A stretch of 64,000 nucleotides of DNA from Adineta vaga (lineage: Eukaryota > Animalia > Rotifera), in assembly GCA_021613535.1 (NCBI GenBank), contig CP075495.1, forward strand, positions 2,356,001 to 2,420,000. Direction: 5' to 3'. The position numbers were made by a program, and so were the translations under genes. The notes under the pieces are model-generated. The model saw only the letters and a program-made list of their open reading frames with translations. It searched no databases and was not told the origin of the DNA. How positions within the stretch are numbered: position 1 is the stretch's first letter; every line of letters begins with the position of its first letter. Positions 13,035 through 20,979 of the stretch are shown here, one piece after another.

Positions 13035-14137
13035 AATAAAAATTCAATTGAACTCTATGCATATATACATAAAAAAATATAAATATCATTAGATCCTACA
13101 TAGAAATTCTCGAATGTGTCTCTCTTACTCTGTTTCTTTATGACCGGTGTTCGTAATTCTTCTTCTCCTTTTTTTCAGTTTTGATGTCGTTGTTTTGTAC
13201 GCATTTATTGCTTTTTCTGTATATTCGCTCTGTCATCTTCTTCAATGTCGAACACCAGCTCAATTCGTATTTGTGTATCCATTTCAGCAACAACAAGAGT
13301 CACCGTTCACCGGTTCGTAATGTTGATTATTGAGCGTCTTGTTTTCATTTTCTTCTCATTTGTATCTGTGTCTTATGTATAAGAATTCATTTAATTGAAT
13401 TGATTTCATTTTTTTGCCTTCTCGCCACATATTGATCAATACTTTCTTCTTGTCAAAAGTTTTCTTTTTTTTTCCTTTTTTTTCTGTTGTCTTGTATTTT
13501 CGTTTTTCTTCTTCAATGTCCATGACACATGAAATTTTGGGTTTTTGTTTGTTCAACAGAAACGAGAAAAGTAGAGATCATAGCAGGACAATTTCAATCG
13601 AGAGATGATTTATGTTTTGTTTTGTTTTGTTTTTTTTTGAAAATATAATATATATATAACACCAAAGAAATCAATTACTGTACATTTTCTTTTGTGTAAC
13701 GAAAAATCCTCGGTATCGCTAGTTGTATGTTCGAATAAAAGACAATGTTATTCGATGTAAGAGATAGTCATCGAAAAGGAAAGTTCACGTCTATGTACTT
13801 TTACACACGCTACATTGTTTTCATAGCGAGAAATAGAAACGTTTCTCTTGCAATCATTGAATAAAAGACAATGAAAAGTTTGATGATGTAAGATATTTCA
13901 ATGACATCAAAGAAATCTGTTTGAATATCATATATTAATTGAACAATTCTCTAACGAGAAAATCGATAAGTAAATCATCAAAGATTATTATCGATATCCA
14001 TATATGAATGTACCGCGATTCTTTGTTAGTATCATCCATTGATTTTAACACGTGTAATGATTATTGTTGTTACAGCGAAACGAAAGAACGAAAAAGAAAA
14101 AAGAAAGAAAACATTAAATTATCGAAACATATGAAGA

Positions 14138-17100
14138 ATGTCAACCGTAAGAATCGTTTCATCGACTAAAGAAGATCTTATACAACGATGGCAACGTCAA
14201 TTACTCGATCGTACGCATATAAATTTTCAAGAATTTTTACATCTTCTTCGACAACAAGTATGCATAATCGCTCAAATATCTCTTCTTGTTCATTTTGTAT
14301 TTTTAATATTGACGAAATTTGATCTTTCTTTTCTCAGCTATTGTTAGAAACGATCTTTTGCTTATTCGATCGTGATTCAAGCGGGTTACTCTCTGAATCA
14401 GAATGGATTGGATCTATATATAAAGTGGCCGAGTATGTGTACATACTATTCTTTTATTTCAAGTTGTCTTAACAAACATTTGATCATCATTTATATATTG
14501 ACAGGATATCCAATCGCACAAAAGATGTTCGAACACTTGAACCATTTATACGTGCTTATCGACATGTTTCACAATGTACTGATACGCTTAATTTAGATCG
14601 ATTCTATATTTTATTTGAAGATATCTCTGTATGTATAGATTATCTATTTGAATCTATTGATTTTCTTTTCAATTAGTTTCGACGAGATTTTGCATTATTA
14701 TTTATGAATGAATCCAGTCAATTGAATATTATGGAATTAACAGATTTACTTCGATCCGTTTCAAAGTTTGTCTGAATTTATATGCGTCAAAATACTGATT
14801 TTGTTTTTCTTTTTTATTTAGTCTTAAATCTGATACAAAATGGCTTTCTTGGCTTGCTTATCAATTTCATATAGCTATTGGTAAACGTCGTGGTTTACTA
14901 TCGAATAATACTCAATTCGATGATAGTATGGATGTTGAAACATTCAAAAATAGTTTTTATTTTAAAATTGTATGTATATTTAATGTTTAAATGAAAGTTA
15001 TTTTCTTTTTCATAGCCTGAATTAGCTGATTGTTTATTCAATTATCTTGATACGGACAGAACAGGTCGATTAACATTAGAAAAATTCATTCGAAATTTAG
15101 AATTTCTTATTGAAGCAACTGATAACGATAAAGTTGAATTTCTTTTTAAAATCTTCGATCGTGATGGTTTGTTCATGGATGAAAAAGAATCAATGAATTG
15201 AATTCATTTCTGTCTCATATTCTAGGCGATGGAAGCATTGATTTTGATGAAATGAAATTATTACTTCGTTGCTTTTTGGAAGAATCTCCATCACTTGATA
15301 TGGAAGAGACATTAGCAGAATTAACAGCAACTCTTTTTCAAGAAACAGATATTGATCAATCAGGTGATATTAGTCTGGATGAATTAGCTGATGCATTTAG
15401 ACGAAATGAACATCTATTCAAGGTTCTTTCATTGAGGTAAATTTTGTCAAGAGTTGTATTTCGATATTTTTTCTCGTGTATTTGTAGTACAAGCAGTTGG
15501 ATTCGACCAAAACCTGTTTCCTTAGGTAAATGTCATAAACGTTCATCAACAATGCGTTCTTGGATACGAAATAATATTGGTTTAATCTTTTTTTGGTCAT
15601 TATATTCATTTATTTGTACTTGCATTTGTGTTGATGTTCTTCATATGTATGTTGGTCAACAACGTGCTCATATTTTTATTGTTATTGCACGATTAAATGG
15701 TAAAAAGAAAGTTTTCATTTTTCTTATTCAAAATAGTTTCTTCTATTCTAGGTGGTATGTTGAATTTTAATTGTGCTTTAATGCTTGTACTAATGCTTCG
15801 AAAACATATTACATGGTTAAGATCCAAAGGTGGAAGTATTCTTCTTCCATTGGATCATCATATTGATATACATAAAACAATCGGAATTATAATTATGATT
15901 GAAACAGCTTTACACACAATAGCACATTTAGCTTATTTATGTTTGTATAATTTTTTGTTGTTTGACAATGAATTTAATCATTTTCTTTTCAGCTTATGTT
16001 TTTCATATTTGTTCCTTACCGAAAGATACCGGTTTTCAATGTAATACGAAAACAAATATGATAACAAAACGTTATCGATTCGATTCTTTAACTAATCAAT
16101 GTATACCATTTGAATATTTTGGATGTGGTGGAAATTGGAATCAATTTTATAATGAAAATTTATGTACACTTCGTTGTAGTAAATATTTGTTTTTTTATTG
16201 TATGATGATTTCTTCTATTCAGTTTTTTCTATTTCTAGAAGCATATCGTGATACATATCAACGATATATTGATGCTATATTTACAGCTAAATTAGGACTT
16301 GGATATATAACTGGTGTACTTGAATTGTTATTAGGTGCATTGATTTATGTTATGTGTTTACCATTTGTACGAAAAAGTGGACATTTTCAGGTGAGAAAGA
16401 AATAGATATGAAAAACGAAAGAAAGAAATATTTGATTTTAGTTATTTTATTGGTGCCATATGTTAACATTGCCATGGTTAATTATTATGCTTGTACATGC
16501 TCCACGTTTTTGGAAATGGGTATTAATACCTGGAATTTTGTATATAATTGAAAAAATTTTACGTTATCGTAAATCACGTTCAAATAAACATGGAGAAACT
16601 TTTATTATGGAAGCAATTCTTTTACCATCTCAAGTAGTTTTTCTTTTCTTTTTCAAACAAACACAAAAATGAATTGTTTGATTTACTTAGGTTATTCATT
16701 TAGTAATTAATAAACCAAGAAAATTTACATATAAACCTGGAGATTATATCTATATAAATATTCCAGCTGTTGCTAATTTTGAATGGCATCCGTTTAGTAT
16801 AAGTAGTGCTCCAGAACATAAAGGTATATTCATGATGAAGATATGAACAATGTGTTATTTCTTCTTTGTTCTTTAGATAGTCTTTGGTTACATCTTCGTG
16901 CAAGTGGCCATTGGACACGACGTGTCTATGAATTATTTCGTTTAAAATTGAAACAAGAACATGGAGGTTTATTAAATGATTGCAATGATCTTCGTCTTCG
17001 TTTATCGATGCGTTCACGTATGTCAAAAAGTTATATTGATGAATTACGAGGTACACATCAACAAGAAAATACTCTTCCATCTGATCTTAATAATAATGAT

Positions 17101-19154
17101 CAATGTTCTCATTCGAAAGCAGTATCAATTTCCTTTCCATTAGTTAAACAACAAACAAGATCGATTTGTTCATCATGTCAATCAACATTAAGTTTAAAAG
17201 ATATACAAAGAAATCCTTTGGATAAAAGTGTTCTTATCAATCCAAATGAATTAGAAAATTTAACTGTTGAAGAAATTGAAAAACTTGCTTATGAAGTCGA
17301 TGATCACGTTAAGAATGATTTACAAAGAAAATATAGATCGACAATAAAAATAAATCAAAATCGTTTAACAGTACCAGCAGTAAATGATTATTGTATTCGT
17401 TTACCAACAATTTCATCGATTGACTATAATGAAACACGTCTTTCTGATGCATTAGGATATTTACGTATGTATAAAAATCATAATCGTATACAATTTAATT
17501 CACTTCAATTCAATGATCGAGAAGATTTACAAGTAAATGAACTAGTTTTTTTTCTTTGAAAGAGAAATGAATCAATACGAATGTTTGTTTTTTTTAGGTT
17601 TTAATTGATGGTCCATATGGTGCACCATCTCAACATATCTTCGAAGCTGAACATGCTGTTTTAATAGCTGCTGGTATTGGTATAACACCATTTGCATCAA
17701 TTTTACAAAGTATTATGTGTCGATATCGAAATCGTCGACATAAATGTCCAAGTTGTGAGTTCATATGGGATAATCCTGGAAGTGAAGAACTTCGTGTGAA
17801 AAAAGTAAAGATTTCTTTTTGATTTTTGAACAAAAAAAAAGAATATTCGATAAAATCATTTTTCAAGGTTGATTTCATTTGGGTAACGCGTGAACAACGT
17901 TCACTTGAATGGTTTATAAGTTTGTTAGCACAAATGGAAATTGAACAACAACGTTTAAGACAAAATTCTGATGAAGGACCTCTACTTGAAGTTCATTTAT
18001 ATGTTACTAGTGCTCAATCACCAGCTGATTTAAAAGCGCTCAATGTTTATTTATCATTAGATTTGATTGGTCAAGAAAATTCGGCAAATTGTGATGCTAT
18101 CGATGGACTTCGACAAAGAACAAAACATGGTCGACCAGATTGGGAACAAGTAAGAAGTTATTTAGGAATTTAAATTTGTTCGTGCTTACTTTGACGTCAG
18201 AATAGTTTTCACTTTGATCACGACAAAGAAAAACCCGACATGAGTAGAACCATCGAAATAATCCCTATGAATAAATTATATTTTTTGACGGAAAAAGAAA
18301 AGTAAAATAGCGTCATAGTAAAATGAGTAAGGTGACCTTTTTTCTCAAAAAAAACACATCATGTCTACGAAAGACAAGTTTACAAATGTAGTATGTGTAT
18401 AAATAAGAATTTTTTTTAACGAGATGAATACAAGATTGAGTTGAATCTATTTAATGCTTGGATTATAAAATCATTTACCTGTGACTGAGTATTCCATTAA
18501 ATACATTTTAATAATTACAGATAATTGGAAATAAAAAGCTTTTCTTTTCACATCCGACATGCAAAATTCTATGTCGTAATAGTGTCTATTTAATATGTCA
18601 AATGTCATGTACATGAATATTTCTTTTTCCATTATTCGCACAAAGCACAGAAAGAAAATTGATCAAAACGTCCGAAACATTTGTTATTACTATTTTTATT
18701 CAAGATGTGCCTAATTTTGGAACTATCTTCTTTTTAATTAAAAGTCTATAATCAGCATATCTATTCTTAACTCATCTATCTGTCAAAACGAACATTTTCC
18801 CACTTTATTAATAGTTCTCAATAAAAAAAAAAAGTTTTTTCTCTATTGGATTTGACTCCTCCGCGCTTGGTTTGTAATACAAATATGTCAGAAATGATAC
18901 GTGCGAAAAGTATCTATAGGTATGAAGAGTATGATGACCTTCTAACTATCTTATGCACTTAGATTATAGTGAAGAAAAGTATCAGCACGTATTGATATCA
19001 TTTATGTTCATGTATATCATAGGTATTTACTGAATTATTATGTCAAAAGAAAGGCAAAATCTCGGTATTTTATTGTGGTCCGCCAGCATTATCAGCTGAA
19101 TTAACAACCAAATGTCGTCAATATGGATTTGCTTATAAAAAAGAACTATTTTAA
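14138..19154 (+). CDS. NOX5: NADPH oxidase 5-type (EF-hand) oxidase with an inserted extracellular Kunitz domain
   Basis: EF hands (DTDRTGRLTLEKF, DRDGDGSIDFDE, DIDQSGDISLDE); heme His pairs in TM3 (HKTIGIIIMIETALH) and TM5 (HMLTLPWLIIMLVH); FAD motif HPFSISSAP; NADPH motifs IDGPYG, AAGIGITPF, DFIWVTR, GRPDW, VFYCGP; terminal KELF*. Confidence 0.95.
15993..16178 (+). other. Kunitz/BPTI domain exon within NOX5 (186 nt, phase 1-1)
   Basis: CSLPKDTGFQCNTKTNMITKRYRFDSLTNQCIPFEYFGCGGNWNQFYNENLCTLRC: six Cys and the F-x-Y-x-GC-x-GN-x-N-x-F signature; flanked by GT-AG introns 15941-15992 and 16179-16238. Confidence 0.92.
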
Positions 19155-20517
19155 GTTTTAGACAAAAAACAAGCAAATGTCTCGTCTTTTCTTTTAAATT
19201 TCTACTCAGTTTCTTTTCTTCAATGTCTTTTTTTTAATTGTATTCTATTTTATTTTGTCTTGTGAATAATTTAAATTTGTATGATTAGGTAAACAATAAG
19301 ATATCCGTTTTCTTTTCTCTTCTTCTTCTTCTTTTTTGTTTATAAGAAAAAAATCAAATACGAAAGAATGATCGTTCAAAAACTACCTATTGACAAACAA
19401 ACATTACTCACTAATCAATGAAAAGTATGTGTAGGCGATGTATTTTTAACGTTTGATCCTAGCTTCAAAGATACTAATTATCAAGACCACATGTGCAGAT
19501 AAAATGTGGTTTGACGCAATCAATGATACTTTGAAAAAGTTATCAATTAGGTGACTTTGCACTAAAAACTTAACTGGTGCTTTTGTATTCGTAACTGCGT
19601 ACTATCTTGCTGACAAGATCAGAATAAGCCTAATCAAGAAAGGTGATCATATGTATGTGAAGGCATGAATTAAGTTTTAATTATTGTAATAAAACTATTT
19701 GTTTGAACTTATCTATATTTCAAGTCATTGTAAACAGGATACGAAAAAGAAAAAGAAAAATAAGAGAAATAGAGAAAATAAAAGAAAGAGAGAAAAAAAA
19801 CGAGAGAGAGAGAGAAAACTTATTGTTTAACTGGTTGAAGGAAATAGATTTTTTCTTACTATAAATTCTCTTTATTAAATATATTATCTATACATTGATA
19901 TACGCGCGCACAACTCTATTTATCCAACATCGAGAAGAAGTAATTCAATCCAATTCATGCACAGGTATGACACGTTCGTAGGGAAGATGTTTTTATCGAA
20001 GAATATTCTTTTACCTACACAAGTTGGTCAAGTTGTAAATTGCCGAAACAAATATTACCGAACAACAAGATCATCGAAATAGAAAGTTCTATGAAATTGC
20101 GTTGATATTTGTTTTGGCGATGAAACACATAATCCACAATTTCTTATTTACTTTACTGATGCTTCGCAGTTTAGTTTGATAAAAACAGCAGGACTTTTTT
20201 TAGAAGAATATTCGCAGATGAGACCTCATTTCACGCCTACTCTTTTCATTTCATATACTTTAATTGCGTGTTAAGTAAATGACAACACAATATTAATTAT
20301 TCTATTAATGTTTATTTCACTGAACATTTCTTTTTTTTACACGAACATCGTACGCTTTCTAAGCATGGAATCTGCTTTAAAATATATTGAGTGACTTAGC
20401 TCGCTTTGTTACTTACAATTTAATCCTAATACGCATCCAATTATCATAGACACATCAAATTCTATTTCCTTTTCTCATGCTATAAATTCATGAATTTATC
20501 CAATCTTCTCTTTTAGA

Positions 20518-20979
20518 ATGTTGATTTTCTCATCCTCTCTCATTGTTTTATTGAATATCTTTGGTCTGGTTTTAACGAATCCTGTTAAACAAAATTCCTC
20601 AAATGACAAATCTGAAGAAGTTACATTGGAAGAAGCTTTTCGTAAAGCAGAAAAAACTCTTCATCGTTATTACTATTTAATGGATTCTGATATTGATCAT
20701 GTAGTTCATGGTATGTTACATATGTTAATCAATCATCCAACTTCGTTTCCATTTATTCCATATCGTGCGATGGATATTGCATTTAAAAATGTGGCAAAAA
20801 AATTAGGTGAACAAGAAATAGATGTTTTAACCAAACCACTTCTATTGGCTATTGATCAACATCATCAAACAAAATCTAAACAAGCAACAACATTTAAATT
20901 AACCGATGAAATCAAAGAAAAAATTGAAGATGCTTTGGATAAATTTTTAGATGAAGGAGAGTTTGACACACATTTGTGA
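20518..20979 (+). CDS. Single-exon secreted protein of unknown function (153 aa)
   Basis: N-terminal signal peptide (MLIFSSSLIVLLNIFGLVLT), helical-looking mature region, coding-like codon usage, AATAAA immediately after the stop. Confidence 0.8.
   Translation: MLIFSSSLIVLLNIFGLVLTNPVKQNSSNDKSEEVTLEEAFRKAEKTLHRYYYLMDSDIDHVVHGMLHMLINHPTSFPFIPYRAMDIAFKNVAKKLGEQEIDVLTKPLLLAIDQHHQTKSKQATTFKLTDEIKEKIEDALDKFLDEGEFDTHL

What the first reader, a model, noticed from the sequence alone, without database searches (positions are those of the whole stretch)
15941..16238. NADPH oxidase (NOX5) carrying an exon-shuffled extracellular Kunitz domain
Seen: immediately after the heme-ligating TM3 (…HTIAHLAYL) and before TM4 (…GYITGVLELLL), a 186-nt exon with phase 1 introns on both sides encodes a full six-cysteine Kunitz/BPTI fold, and the NOX frame is intact across it. 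Established: the TM3-TM4 loop (loop C) of NOX enzymes is extracellular and lies over the outer heme where O2 is reduced; phase 1-1 modules are typical of exon shuffling of extracellular domains. I know of no described NOX with a Kunitz domain. Inference: a Ca2+-activated ROS generator that docks on, or is gated by, an extracellular partner such as a protease, matrix protein or peroxidase. Because the exon is symmetric, skipping it would give an ordinary NOX5.
Basis: partly seen in the sequence, partly recalled or inferred. Interest (0 to 1): 0.92.

Follow-up and report, generated by a model that had tools for sequence, protein, structure and literature searches.

The report
Rotifer NADPH oxidase with built-in Kunitz domain
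A calcium-activated NADPH oxidase (NOX5) gene of a bdelloid rotifer carries a real, expressed Kunitz-type domain in the outward-facing loop next to its outer haem; all sampled bdelloid rotifers have this design, no other NOX5 found here does, and no paper I could find describes it.

Summary
Window 15993-16178 is a 186-nt, phase 1-1 exon flanked by GT..AG introns. It encodes a Kunitz/BPTI domain (Pfam PF00014, 49 bits) between TM3 and TM4 of a 17-exon, 1092-aa NOX5-type gene (CDS 14138-19154, + strand).

Spliced contigs from four runs in three studies join the exon to both neighbouring NOX exons. Skipping the exon in this copy gives T+AA, a TAA stop, not an ordinary NOX5.

The design is not unique to this locus. 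The ohnolog on another chromosome has it too, and the scan flagged that copy separately as s1-502090. So do the NOX5 proteins found for Adineta, Rotaria and Didymodactylos, on the same exon and in the same intron phases. Brachionus and about 110 other NOX5 proteins lack it. A tree needs only one gain.

The six cysteines and 21 of 61 positions are invariant. Purifying selection acts on the exon (omega about 0.23, against 0.02 for the enzyme core). The canonical protease-binding loop is lengthened, has Asn, His, Gln or Pro at P1, and usually carries N-glycosylation sites.

The best reading is a constitutive, rigidly mounted ectodomain that caps or docks, not a classical protease inhibitor. The function is inferred, not shown. 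This is a new variant of a known kind. The proteins sit in public databases as unnamed products, and no paper I found describes the design.

The parts
14138..19154 (+). Complete CDS of the NOX5-type gene: 17 exons, 1092 aa, all introns GT..AG (46-80 nt, except the last at 873 nt)
   Evidence: Model built locally, guided by the A. ricciae ortholog P0155 and by RNA contig junctions. It is 957 identical residues to P0155, 84% of that protein's 1141.
14138..15436 (+). Exons 1-7: N-terminal cytosolic EF-hand region (14138-14257, 14338-14432, 14505-14628, 14677-14765, 14822-14969, 15016-15166, 15226-15436)
   Evidence: Pfam EF-hand_1/6/7/8 hits on 15016-15165 and 15183-15437. Junction 14257>14338 seen in run X2.
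15488..15699 (+). Exon 8: TM1 and the start of TM2
   Evidence: RNA contig X9 record 13 joins 15228-15434 to 15486-15698. Helix positions come from the AlphaFold model of the ortholog.
15752..15940 (+). Exon 9 (phase 1-1): end of TM2, loop B, and TM3 with both haem-ligating histidines (..DIHKTIG.. and ..ALHTIAH.., 14 residues apart)
   Evidence: Pfam Ferric_reduct hit. The histidines are invariant in a 101-sequence NOX5 alignment.
15941..15992 (+). Intron 9: 52 nt, GT..AG, phase 1
   Evidence: Removed in spliced contigs of runs X1 and X9.
15993..16178 (+). Exon 10: Kunitz/BPTI domain, 186 nt, phase 1-1, residues about 447-509 of the model
   Evidence: PF00014, 49.2 bits. PDB Kunitz hits. Included in RNA contig X9 record 14 between exons 9 and 11.
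16179..16238 (+). Intron 10: 60 nt, GT..AG, phase 1. In frame and free of stops, so retention would add 20 residues
   Evidence: Removed in spliced contigs of runs X2 and X9. Open frame seen.
16239..16390 (+). Exon 11: remainder of loop C (..AYRDTYQRYIDAIFTAKLGLG..) and TM4
   Evidence: Aligns with loop C and TM4 of Kunitz-less NOX5. Junction 16390>16442 seen in X1, X2, X3 and X9.
16442..16633 (+). Exon 12: TM5 (two haem histidines 13 residues apart) and TM6
   Evidence: H250 and H263 are invariant in alignment A1. 88% identical to the ohnolog.
16691..16823 (+). Exon 13: FAD-binding domain with the HPFSIS motif
   Evidence: PF08022, 52 bits.
16877..17532 (+). Exon 14: poorly conserved insert of 219 aa within the dehydrogenase domain
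   Evidence: No Pfam hit. 45% identical to the ohnolog and 77% to A. ricciae. Covered by RNA contigs.
17598..19154 (+). Exons 15-17 (17598-17804, 17868-18149, 19023-19154): NADPH-binding domain and stop codon
   Evidence: PF08030 hits on all three. Junctions 17804>17868 and 18149>19023 seen in RNA contigs.

Best explanation
SHOWN.
- The gene is a NOX5-type, EF-hand (Ca2+-activated type) NADPH oxidase of a bdelloid rotifer.
- Its extracytosolic TM3-TM4 loop (loop C) carries a Kunitz/BPTI-fold domain on a separate phase 1-1 exon.
- The exon is spliced into the mRNA. It is present in both ancient duplicate copies (ohnologs) of this genome and in the NOX5 proteins found for three bdelloid genera. 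It is absent from the monogonont Brachionus and from all other NOX5 sampled.
- So it was gained once, in the bdelloid stem lineage, and has been kept under purifying selection.

INFERRED.
- In the model, the TM3 helix runs straight into the first Kunitz cysteine. The domain's C-terminal helix leads through short helices into TM4. The domain is therefore rigidly mounted on top of TM3.
- Its base then lies over the outer-haem, O2-reducing face. Its reactive-loop end points away from the membrane.
- That loop is lengthened (19-35 residues against 15), has Asn, His, Gln or Pro at P1, and usually has N-glycosylation sites.
- The domain therefore most likely acts as a disulfide-braced, usually glycosylated ectodomain. 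It would shield or shape the extracellular face of the oxidase, or dock it to an extracellular partner or matrix. It is unlikely to be a classical substrate-like serine-protease inhibitor.
For: Domain and gene identity: Pfam and PDB sequence hits.

Catalytic residues intact: four haem histidines plus the HPFSIS, GIGITPF and CGP motifs.

Expression: GT..AG-spliced contigs hold junctions 15940>15993 (X1, X9) and 16178>16239 (X2, X9). A 1463-nt contig runs from exon 9 through 10 and 11 to exon 14.

Ohnolog transcript: it has 274 letters between the equivalents of 15939 and 16281. That is exactly 1+231+42, its own 231-nt Kunitz exon.

No productive skip: the skip junction is TAA in this copy.

Distribution:
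- PF00014 lies inside NOX5 in Didymodactylos carnosus, three Adineta steineri proteins, two A. ricciae, Rotaria magnacalcarata, R. socialis and R. sp. Silwood1, plus environmental fragments.
- It is absent from Brachionus calyciflorus and about 110 insect, vertebrate, mollusc and other NOX5.

Tree: the Kunitz-bearing proteins form one clade (SH-aLRT 100), sister to a Kunitz-less clade that includes Brachionus.

Gene structure: same exon and phase-1 introns in A. ricciae, Rotaria and Didymodactylos.

Selection: omega 0.23 (bootstrap 0.11-0.47) for the Kunitz exon against 0.02 for the core, A. vaga against A. ricciae. 21 invariant positions, including all six cysteines.

Reactive loop: loop lengths, P1 residues and N-glycosylation sequons in 10 of 11 sequences.

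Structure: AlphaFold model of the orthologous TM+Kunitz segment has pLDDT 86, pTM 0.83, helix 93-130 continuous to Cys1, and a beta-hairpin plus C-terminal helix. Foldseek matches the NOX5 TM domain (5o0t, 8u86) and Kunitz domains.
Against: - The function is untested. No coordinates of the model were available, so the position of the domain over the haem pocket follows from connectivity and known Kunitz geometry, not from measurement.
- The window's own copy has the shortest loop (19 residues) and no N-glycosylation site. The glycan argument does not apply to it.
- Some natural Kunitz inhibitors have unusual P1 residues, so inhibition is not excluded.
- Contigs drop rare isoforms, and 9 joints were not displayed. 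A minor skipped form of the ohnolog (junction GAA, in frame) cannot be excluded.
- The isolated window exon folded with low confidence (pLDDT 48.5).
Confidence: 0.55

Rival explanations
1. The domain is a working, membrane-tethered Kunitz protease inhibitor. The protein is then bifunctional, producing ROS while locally inhibiting an extracellular, gut or pathogen serine protease. Alternatively, a protease binding the loop gates the oxidase.
For: The scaffold is a bona fide Kunitz fold with all disulfides and the conserved secondary loop (..F.Y.GCGGN..). The reactive-loop end should face outward and be accessible (inferred). Fast evolution of the loop (dN about 7 times the core) is also typical of inhibitor-protease arms races.
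Against: P1 is Asn, His, Gln or Pro, never Lys, Arg or a large hydrophobic residue. The loop after Cys2 carries 4-20 extra residues exactly where a canonical inhibitor must be rigid. In 10 of 11 sequences it also carries 1-3 N-glycosylation sequons.
Confidence: 0.15
2. The exon is a regulated cassette. Isoforms with and without the Kunitz domain are both made, and the skipped form is an ordinary NOX5.
For: The exon is symmetric (phase 1-1). In the ohnolog and in Didymodactylos the skip junction would be an in-frame sense codon (GAA and ACT respectively).
Against: In the window's copy the skip junction is a TAA stop. Only inclusion junctions were listed, in four runs of three studies and for both ohnologs. 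No database protein of the clade lacks the domain.
Confidence: 0.08
3. The insertion is a tolerated passenger. A Kunitz module landed in a permissive loop and persists without contributing to function.
For: The domain evolves much faster than the enzyme core. Omega between the ohnologs is about 0.77, though synonymous sites are saturated. Loop length drifts between 19 and 35 residues.
Against: The domain is retained with an intact frame, six cysteines and 21 invariant positions. This holds in both ohnologs and in three genera, including the early-branching Didymodactylos. Omega is 0.23, with an upper bootstrap bound of 0.47, well below 1. Bdelloids have no Kunitz-less member of this NOX5 orthogroup.
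Confidence: 0.1
4. Artefact: the Kunitz exon belongs to another transcript, or is a chance open frame.
For: None found.
Against: Single RNA contigs run through exons 9-10-11. The Pfam E-value is 5.8e-13. The exon is conserved across species.
Confidence: 0.01

Closest known systems
NOX5 (EF-hand, Ca2+-activated NADPH oxidase; human NOX5 cryo-EM 8u85/8u86, Cylindrospermum NOX5 TM domain 5o0t)
   Same: N-terminal EF-hands. Six-TM ferric-reductase domain with four haem histidines. FAD_binding_8 and NAD_binding_6 domains. It groups with proteins named NOX5, and the TM model superposes on 5o0t (TM-score 0.86 by target) and on 8u86 (rmsd 2.0).
   Different: Loop C holds a 62-77-residue folded Kunitz domain. 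Loop length between the aligned anchor columns is 96-103 residues, against a median of 27 in 101 NOX5 sequences. There is also a poorly conserved insert of about 219 aa in the dehydrogenase domain.
DUOX1/2 (NOX-family oxidases with an extracellular peroxidase-homology domain; 7d3f, 6wxu)
   Same: The only well-known NOX-family enzymes with a folded extracellular domain over the outer-haem face. They are also EF-hand regulated. The TM model matches them by Foldseek.
   Different: In DUOX the ectodomain is N-terminal, needs an extra TM helix and the DUOXA partner, and has a peroxidase fold. Here a small disulfide-rich Kunitz fold is inserted inside loop C.
Kunitz/BPTI domains in membrane or matrix proteins (APP KPI domain 1aap; collagen VI alpha3 C5 domain 1knt/2knt; HAI-1)
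   Same: Six-cysteine scaffold, beta-hairpin plus C-terminal helix, and a domain carried on its own exon. The APP KPI exon being a symmetric cassette is from my own knowledge.
   Different: The Cys2-Cys3 segment is 19-35 residues instead of 15. P1 is Asn, His, Gln or Pro. N-glycosylation sequons lie in the loop. The domain sits inside a polytopic membrane enzyme rather than in a type I or secreted protein. In being probably non-inhibitory it resembles the collagen VI C5 type more than BPTI (own knowledge).
Extracellular loops of NOX2 and NOX4 (glycosylated loops C/E of NOX2; the extended E-loop of NOX4, linked to H2O2 release)
   Same: Precedent that extracytosolic loops over the outer haem are glycosylated and influence product and maturation (own knowledge; not tested here).
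   Different: Those are unstructured or short loop extensions, not an inserted autonomous domain.

Membership tests
NOX5 subfamily of NADPH oxidases | N-terminal EF-hand Ca2+-binding region | tested here: met
   EF-hand_1/6/7/8 hits on 15016-15165 and 15183-15437. Orthologs carry PF13405, PF13499, PF13833, PF13202 and PF00036.
NOX5 subfamily of NADPH oxidases | Six-TM ferric-reductase domain with two histidine pairs (TM3 and TM5) ligating two haems | tested here: met
   PF01794 partial hit on exon 9. H100, H114, H250 and H263 are invariant in alignment A1 and present in the window exons. The fold matches 5o0t and 8u86.
NOX5 subfamily of NADPH oxidases | FAD_binding_8 and NAD_binding_6 dehydrogenase domain with HPF(T/S), G-x-G-x-x-P and CGP motifs | tested here: met
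   PF08022 at 52 bits. PF08030 on exons 15-17. Motifs read directly from the sequence.
NOX5 subfamily of NADPH oxidases | Clusters with named NOX5 proteins rather than NOX1-4 or DUOX | tested here: met
   All best hits are named NOX5. Tree.
NOX5 subfamily of NADPH oxidases | Ca2+-dependent superoxide production | not testable with these tools
   Needs expression and a ROS assay.
Kunitz/BPTI domain (PF00014) | Profile match above the curated threshold | tested here: met
   49.2 bits against a cut-off of 21. All 10 bdelloid copies match, best E 1.9e-14.
Kunitz/BPTI domain (PF00014) | Six cysteines with 8/15/7/12/3 spacing | tested here: met
   Six invariant cysteines. Spacings 7/12/3 are exact. 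C1-C2 is 9, and C2-C3 is 19-35 instead of 15.
Kunitz/BPTI domain (PF00014) | Fold: beta-hairpin followed by a C-terminal helix | tested here: inconclusive
   Met for the A. ricciae ortholog within the TM+Kunitz model (E156-162, E167-173, H186-192; Foldseek TM-score 0.7-0.84 to Kunitz chains). The window's own exon folded alone gave pLDDT 48.5, with the right secondary-structure order only.
Canonical Kunitz serine-protease inhibitors | Rigid canonical binding loop with a P1 Lys/Arg (or Leu/Met/Phe/Tyr) directly after Cys2 | tested here: not met
   P1 is N (window) or H, Q, P, N in the others. There are 4-20 extra residues in the loop, and sequons in 10 of 11 sequences.
Canonical Kunitz serine-protease inhibitors | Measured protease inhibition | not testable with these tools
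   Needs recombinant protein.
Exon-shuffled class 1-1 module | Domain on one exon with phase 1 introns on both sides | tested here: met
   The same holds in the ohnolog, A. ricciae, Rotaria and Didymodactylos. Exon 9 is also phase 1-1, so the symmetry is not unique to this exon.
Exon-shuffled class 1-1 module | A phase-1 recipient intron at the same site in relatives lacking the module | tested here: not met
   Brachionus calyciflorus encodes the whole TM region on one exon. P0159 and P0163 are intronless. Intron loss in these lineages cannot be excluded.

The most novel reading that the evidence does not exclude
The Kunitz ectodomain is a ligand-sensing or gating module. Binding of an extracellular partner (a protease, matrix or eggshell protein, or a peroxidase) to its exposed, fast-evolving tip would be transmitted through the rigid TM3 connection to the outer haem. 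That would make this the first NOX5 regulated from outside the cell as well as by cytosolic Ca2+, possibly tied to bdelloid-specific biology such as desiccation recovery or cuticle and egg cross-linking.
Probability: 0.12. Interest if true: 0.85.

Novelty: new variant of a known kind. Interest (0 to 1): 0.6.

Why it matters
NOX enzymes are intensively studied, and their extracytosolic loops sit directly over the site where O2 is reduced. Apart from the N-terminal peroxidase-like domain of DUOX, I know of no NOX-family member with a folded extracellular domain.

A natural NOX5 with an autonomous disulfide-rich domain inside loop C shows that this loop tolerates a whole domain. The insertion has been kept through the divergence of three bdelloid genera and in both ohnologs.

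It also offers a ready-made experiment on how the extracellular face controls product identity, stability or partner docking. The natural control is the Kunitz-less monogonont enzyme.

Finally, it is a clean, datable example of a domain gained within an ancient asexual lineage: one gain, before the bdelloid radiation and before the divergence of the ohnologs.

Tried and rejected
- **Isolated exon fold.** Folding the window's Kunitz exon alone with a 10-sequence alignment gave pLDDT 48.5. This is uninformative. I relied on the TM+Kunitz model of the ortholog instead.
- **Run labels.** The look-up of sequencing runs labelled no holder as RNA on record. The laid contigs lack the GT..AG introns, so they derive from spliced RNA.
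- **Automatic intron picker.** It misplaced introns 7 and 8. I corrected them from RNA contig X9 record 13 and the GT..AG rule.
- **Architecture search choice.** I considered using the 157-aa open frame 15932-16402 (Kunitz, read-through intron and TM4) and rejected it. Multi-Kunitz proteins would probably fill the 150-hit list. I used a NOX-only exon instead and then database full-length orthologs.
- **Ohnolog dN/dS.** The value of 0.77 for the Kunitz exon is not trusted. Synonymous sites are saturated. I used the A. vaga against A. ricciae pair instead.
- **Neighbours and RNA families.** Neighbouring open frames gave no meaningful Pfam hit. An Rfam scan of 13500-19800 gave nothing. The 873-nt last intron has no conserved element shared with the ohnolog.
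- **Third NOX locus.** The C6 locus (about 40% identical, with an EF-hand-like N-terminus) has no Kunitz exon.
- **Joined protein.** The joined (spliced) protein was assembled only inside local scripts, to check frame, length and identity. It was not sent to any search or fold tool. Searches were made exon by exon by reference, or with database orthologs.
Full report
**What is in the sequence**

The window is AT-rich (about 29-33% G+C), and the introns of this gene are very short. On the + strand, 14138-19154 holds a 17-exon gene. Every intron is GT..AG, 46-80 nt long, except the last at 873 nt. The model encodes 1092 residues.

- Exons 1-7 give EF-hand matches.
- Exon 9 gives a ferric-reductase TM match.
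- Exon 13 gives FAD_binding_8 at 52 bits.
- Exons 15-17 give NAD_binding_6.

The two haem-ligating histidine pairs are present, in TM3 (exon 9) and TM5 (exon 12). They are invariant in a 101-sequence NOX5 alignment. The HPFSIS, GIGITPF and CGP motifs can be read directly. This is a NOX5-type oxidase with its catalytic residues intact.

**The finding itself**

Exon 10 (15993-16178, 186 nt) lies between a 52-nt and a 60-nt intron, both phase 1. Its 61 whole codons score 49.2 bits (E 5.8e-13, cut-off 21) on Pfam Kunitz_BPTI. They also match solved Kunitz domains such as bikunin, boophilin, APP-KPI and collagen VI C5.

Spliced, the protein reads ..HTIAHLAYL-S-[Kunitz]-K-AYRDTYQ... The domain therefore starts eight residues after the outer-haem histidine of TM3.

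Joining 15940 directly to 16239 makes T+AA, a TAA stop. In this copy, skipping the exon cannot give an ordinary NOX5.

**Expression**

One call laid the contigs of four public runs on 14100-19200. The contigs lack the GT..AG introns, so they come from spliced RNA.

- Junction 15940>15993 is present in runs X1 and X9.
- Junction 16178>16239 is present in runs X2 and X9.
- A single 1463-nt contig (X9, record 14) runs from exon 9 through 10 and 11 to exon 14.
- No 15940>16239 junction was among the joints listed.

Two caveats apply. Nine joints were not displayed, and contigs drop rare forms.

A second, more abundant contig is about 82-85% identical. It has 274 letters between the equivalents of 15939 and 16281. 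That is exactly 1+231+42, which is what the ohnolog described next would give with its own Kunitz exon included.

**The genome and the second copy**

The assembly has 100,824,805 bases in six contigs, and the window lies on contig 2. This fits the six-scaffold haploid Adineta vaga assembly, whose chromosomes 1-3 are homoeologous to 4-6 (PMC8494291). The species name is my inference. The closest proteins are from Adineta ricciae.

Contig 5 holds a second copy (locus L004, minus strand). Its NOX exons are 72-93% identical. It has a 231-nt Kunitz exon at the same place and in the same phases, with six cysteines kept and 15 extra residues between Cys2 and Cys3. The scan's first stage flagged that exon independently (s1-502090).

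A third locus on contig 6 is about 40% identical and has an EF-hand-like N-terminus. It has no Kunitz exon. Further NOX/FRE-type loci exist in the genome but are more distant.

**Distribution**

I searched 1.84 billion representative proteins with the NOX-only exon 16. Among about 58 long NOX5 representatives, exactly one had a Kunitz pattern: P0004 from Didymodactylos carnosus.

Searching 5.8 billion proteins with P0004 found PF00014 inside NOX5 in:
- D. carnosus;
- Adineta steineri (three proteins);
- A. ricciae (two proteins);
- Rotaria magnacalcarata, R. socialis and R. sp. Silwood1.

It was absent from Brachionus calyciflorus and from the other roughly 110 listed NOX5, which came from insects, crustaceans, a spider, molluscs, a hemichordate and vertebrates.

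A search restricted to the TM3-Kunitz-TM4 segment found only these proteins, plus an environmental bdelloid-like contig. So did a search with that segment as a short query, to reach fragments. It found three short fragments with bdelloid-type flanks.

In a quick maximum-likelihood tree the Kunitz-bearing proteins form one clade (SH-aLRT 100). That clade is sister to a Kunitz-less clade containing Brachionus. Didymodactylos branches first, followed by the split into the two ohnolog types. One gain suffices.

The same exon with phase-1 introns is present in A. ricciae, R. magnacalcarata and D. carnosus.

**Origin**

The phase 1-1 symmetry fits exon shuffling, but the recipient intron is not demonstrated.
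- Brachionus encodes the entire TM region on one exon.
- The nearest Kunitz-less relatives, P0159 and P0163, are intronless.
- Exon 9 is also phase 1-1.
- In Kunitz-less relatives TM3 ends ..HLINLYFVC.., which aligns with the bdelloid ..HLAYLGYVFYIC... The first five or six residues of the 'Kunitz exon', perhaps including Cys1, may therefore be old TM3 sequence rather than imported module.

How the module and its two introns arrived remains open.

**What the domain looks like**

Across 11 bdelloid sequences, 21 of 61 positions are invariant. These include all six cysteines and the ..F.Y.GC.GN.N.F.. core.

Between the window and A. ricciae, the Kunitz exon has dN 0.163 and omega 0.23 (bootstrap 0.11-0.47). 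The core exons have dN 0.024 and omega 0.02. The exon is constrained, but evolves about seven times faster than the core.

The variation is concentrated right after Cys2, where canonical inhibitors have their rigid P1-P4' binding loop.
- The Cys2-Cys3 distance is 19-35 residues instead of 15.
- P1 is Asn (window), His, Gln or Pro.
- 10 of 11 sequences carry one to three N-x-S/T sequons there.

The window's copy is the exception, with the shortest loop and no sequon.

An AlphaFold model of the orthologous TM+Kunitz segment was built on 101 aligned NOX5 sequences. It has pLDDT 86.2 and pTM 0.83. The TM3 helix (93-130) continues up to Cys1. A beta-hairpin and a C-terminal helix follow, and two short helices lead into TM4. 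Foldseek matches the NOX5 TM domain (5o0t, 8u85-8u87) and, separately, Kunitz domains.

**How it most likely works**

Established NOX topology puts loop C outside the cytosol, next to the outer haem. A disulfide-rich domain fits that compartment.

Both ends of a Kunitz domain lie at the pole opposite the reactive loop. Here both ends are tied by short, structured connections to TM3 and to the remainder of loop C. The domain should therefore stand rigidly on the extracellular face with its variable, mostly glycosylatable tip pointing outward. This rests on the secondary structure and on known Kunitz geometry.

I therefore favour a constitutive ectodomain that shields or shapes the O2-reducing face, or docks the oxidase to an extracellular partner or matrix (confidence about 0.55). 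The rivals, in order:
- a classical tethered protease inhibitor (0.15);
- a tolerated passenger (0.10);
- a regulated cassette exon (0.08);
- an artefact (0.01).

**Comparison with what is known, and novelty**

The enzyme passes every sequence-level test for NOX5, and the insert passes the tests for a Kunitz domain. The insert fails the test for a canonical inhibitory loop.

The nearest functional analogy is DUOX, the only well-known NOX-family enzyme with a folded ectodomain. DUOX uses an N-terminal peroxidase-like domain and an extra TM helix.

Full-text searches found no description of this design. I tried NADPH oxidase + Kunitz + NOX5, then bdelloid + Kunitz, then NADPH oxidase + Kunitz domain + domain architecture. 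A comparative ROS-gene study that included A. vaga NOX genes did not turn up in the search that required the word Kunitz.

The proteins are in public databases as 'unnamed protein product / NADPH oxidase 5' with an automatic PF00014 hit. The architecture is therefore visible but undescribed. I class it as a new variant of a known kind, with interest about 0.6.

The joined protein was built only inside local scripts, to check frame and length. It was not sent to any search or fold tool. Searches used single exons by reference, or database orthologs.

Noticed in passing
window 16040-16062 (Cys2-Cys3 loop of the Kunitz exon): The window's copy has the shortest reactive loop of all bdelloid copies (19 residues) and is the only one without an N-glycosylation sequon. 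Relative to A. ricciae it lacks about 9 residues, including the NQS site. This looks like a lineage-specific deletion.
   Followed up: partly
L004:5391-5621 (minus strand; G000 contig 5, about 14890890-14891120): The B-type ohnologs (A. vaga contig 5, A. ricciae P0158, A. steineri P0157) carry a seventh cysteine in the Kunitz domain (..RDCGFPC..). The environmental B-type copy has Gly at that position. An unpaired cysteine could form an inter-loop or intermolecular disulfide.
   Followed up: no
window 16179-16238: Intron 10 is 60 nt, in frame and free of stops, so retention would add 20 residues. Several database 'proteins' (P0269, P0271, P0272) are prokaryote-style gene calls that read through such bdelloid introns in frame.
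   Followed up: partly
window gene against L004 and L007: Apparent synonymous divergence between the two ohnologs in one genome (dS 0.3-1.0) is lower than between the A. vaga and A. ricciae orthologs (0.7-1.45), although the ohnologs are older by protein identity and by the tree. Likely causes are saturation with shared AT-biased codon usage, or gene conversion between ohnologs. This was not resolved.
   Followed up: partly
window 18150-19022: The last intron is 873 nt, more than ten times the length of the other 15 introns. The long length is conserved in the ohnolog (824 nt) and in A. ricciae (about 850 nt). Sequence conservation is only about 115 nt near its 5' end against A. ricciae. There is no Rfam hit and no long ORF with a match.
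   Followed up: partly
L005 (G000 contig 6, 11614000-11623999, minus strand): A distant NOX paralog (36-46% identical) with an EF-hand-like N-terminus and a short loop C without a Kunitz domain. PF08022 and PF08030 scans show about ten NOX/FRE-type loci in the genome, mostly in ohnolog pairs.
   Followed up: partly
L006 (Brachionus calyciflorus), L011 (Logan SRR8185553 contig): The closest Kunitz-less NOX5 relatives are intron-poor or intronless. P0159 and P0163 are single ORFs of about 3.06 kb. The Brachionus TM region is one exon. The bdelloid gene, by contrast, has 16 introns.
   Followed up: partly
window 20515-20976: Downstream ORF of 154 aa with an N-terminal hydrophobic, signal-like segment and no significant Pfam match. 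Any relation to the NOX5 gene is unknown.
   Followed up: partly
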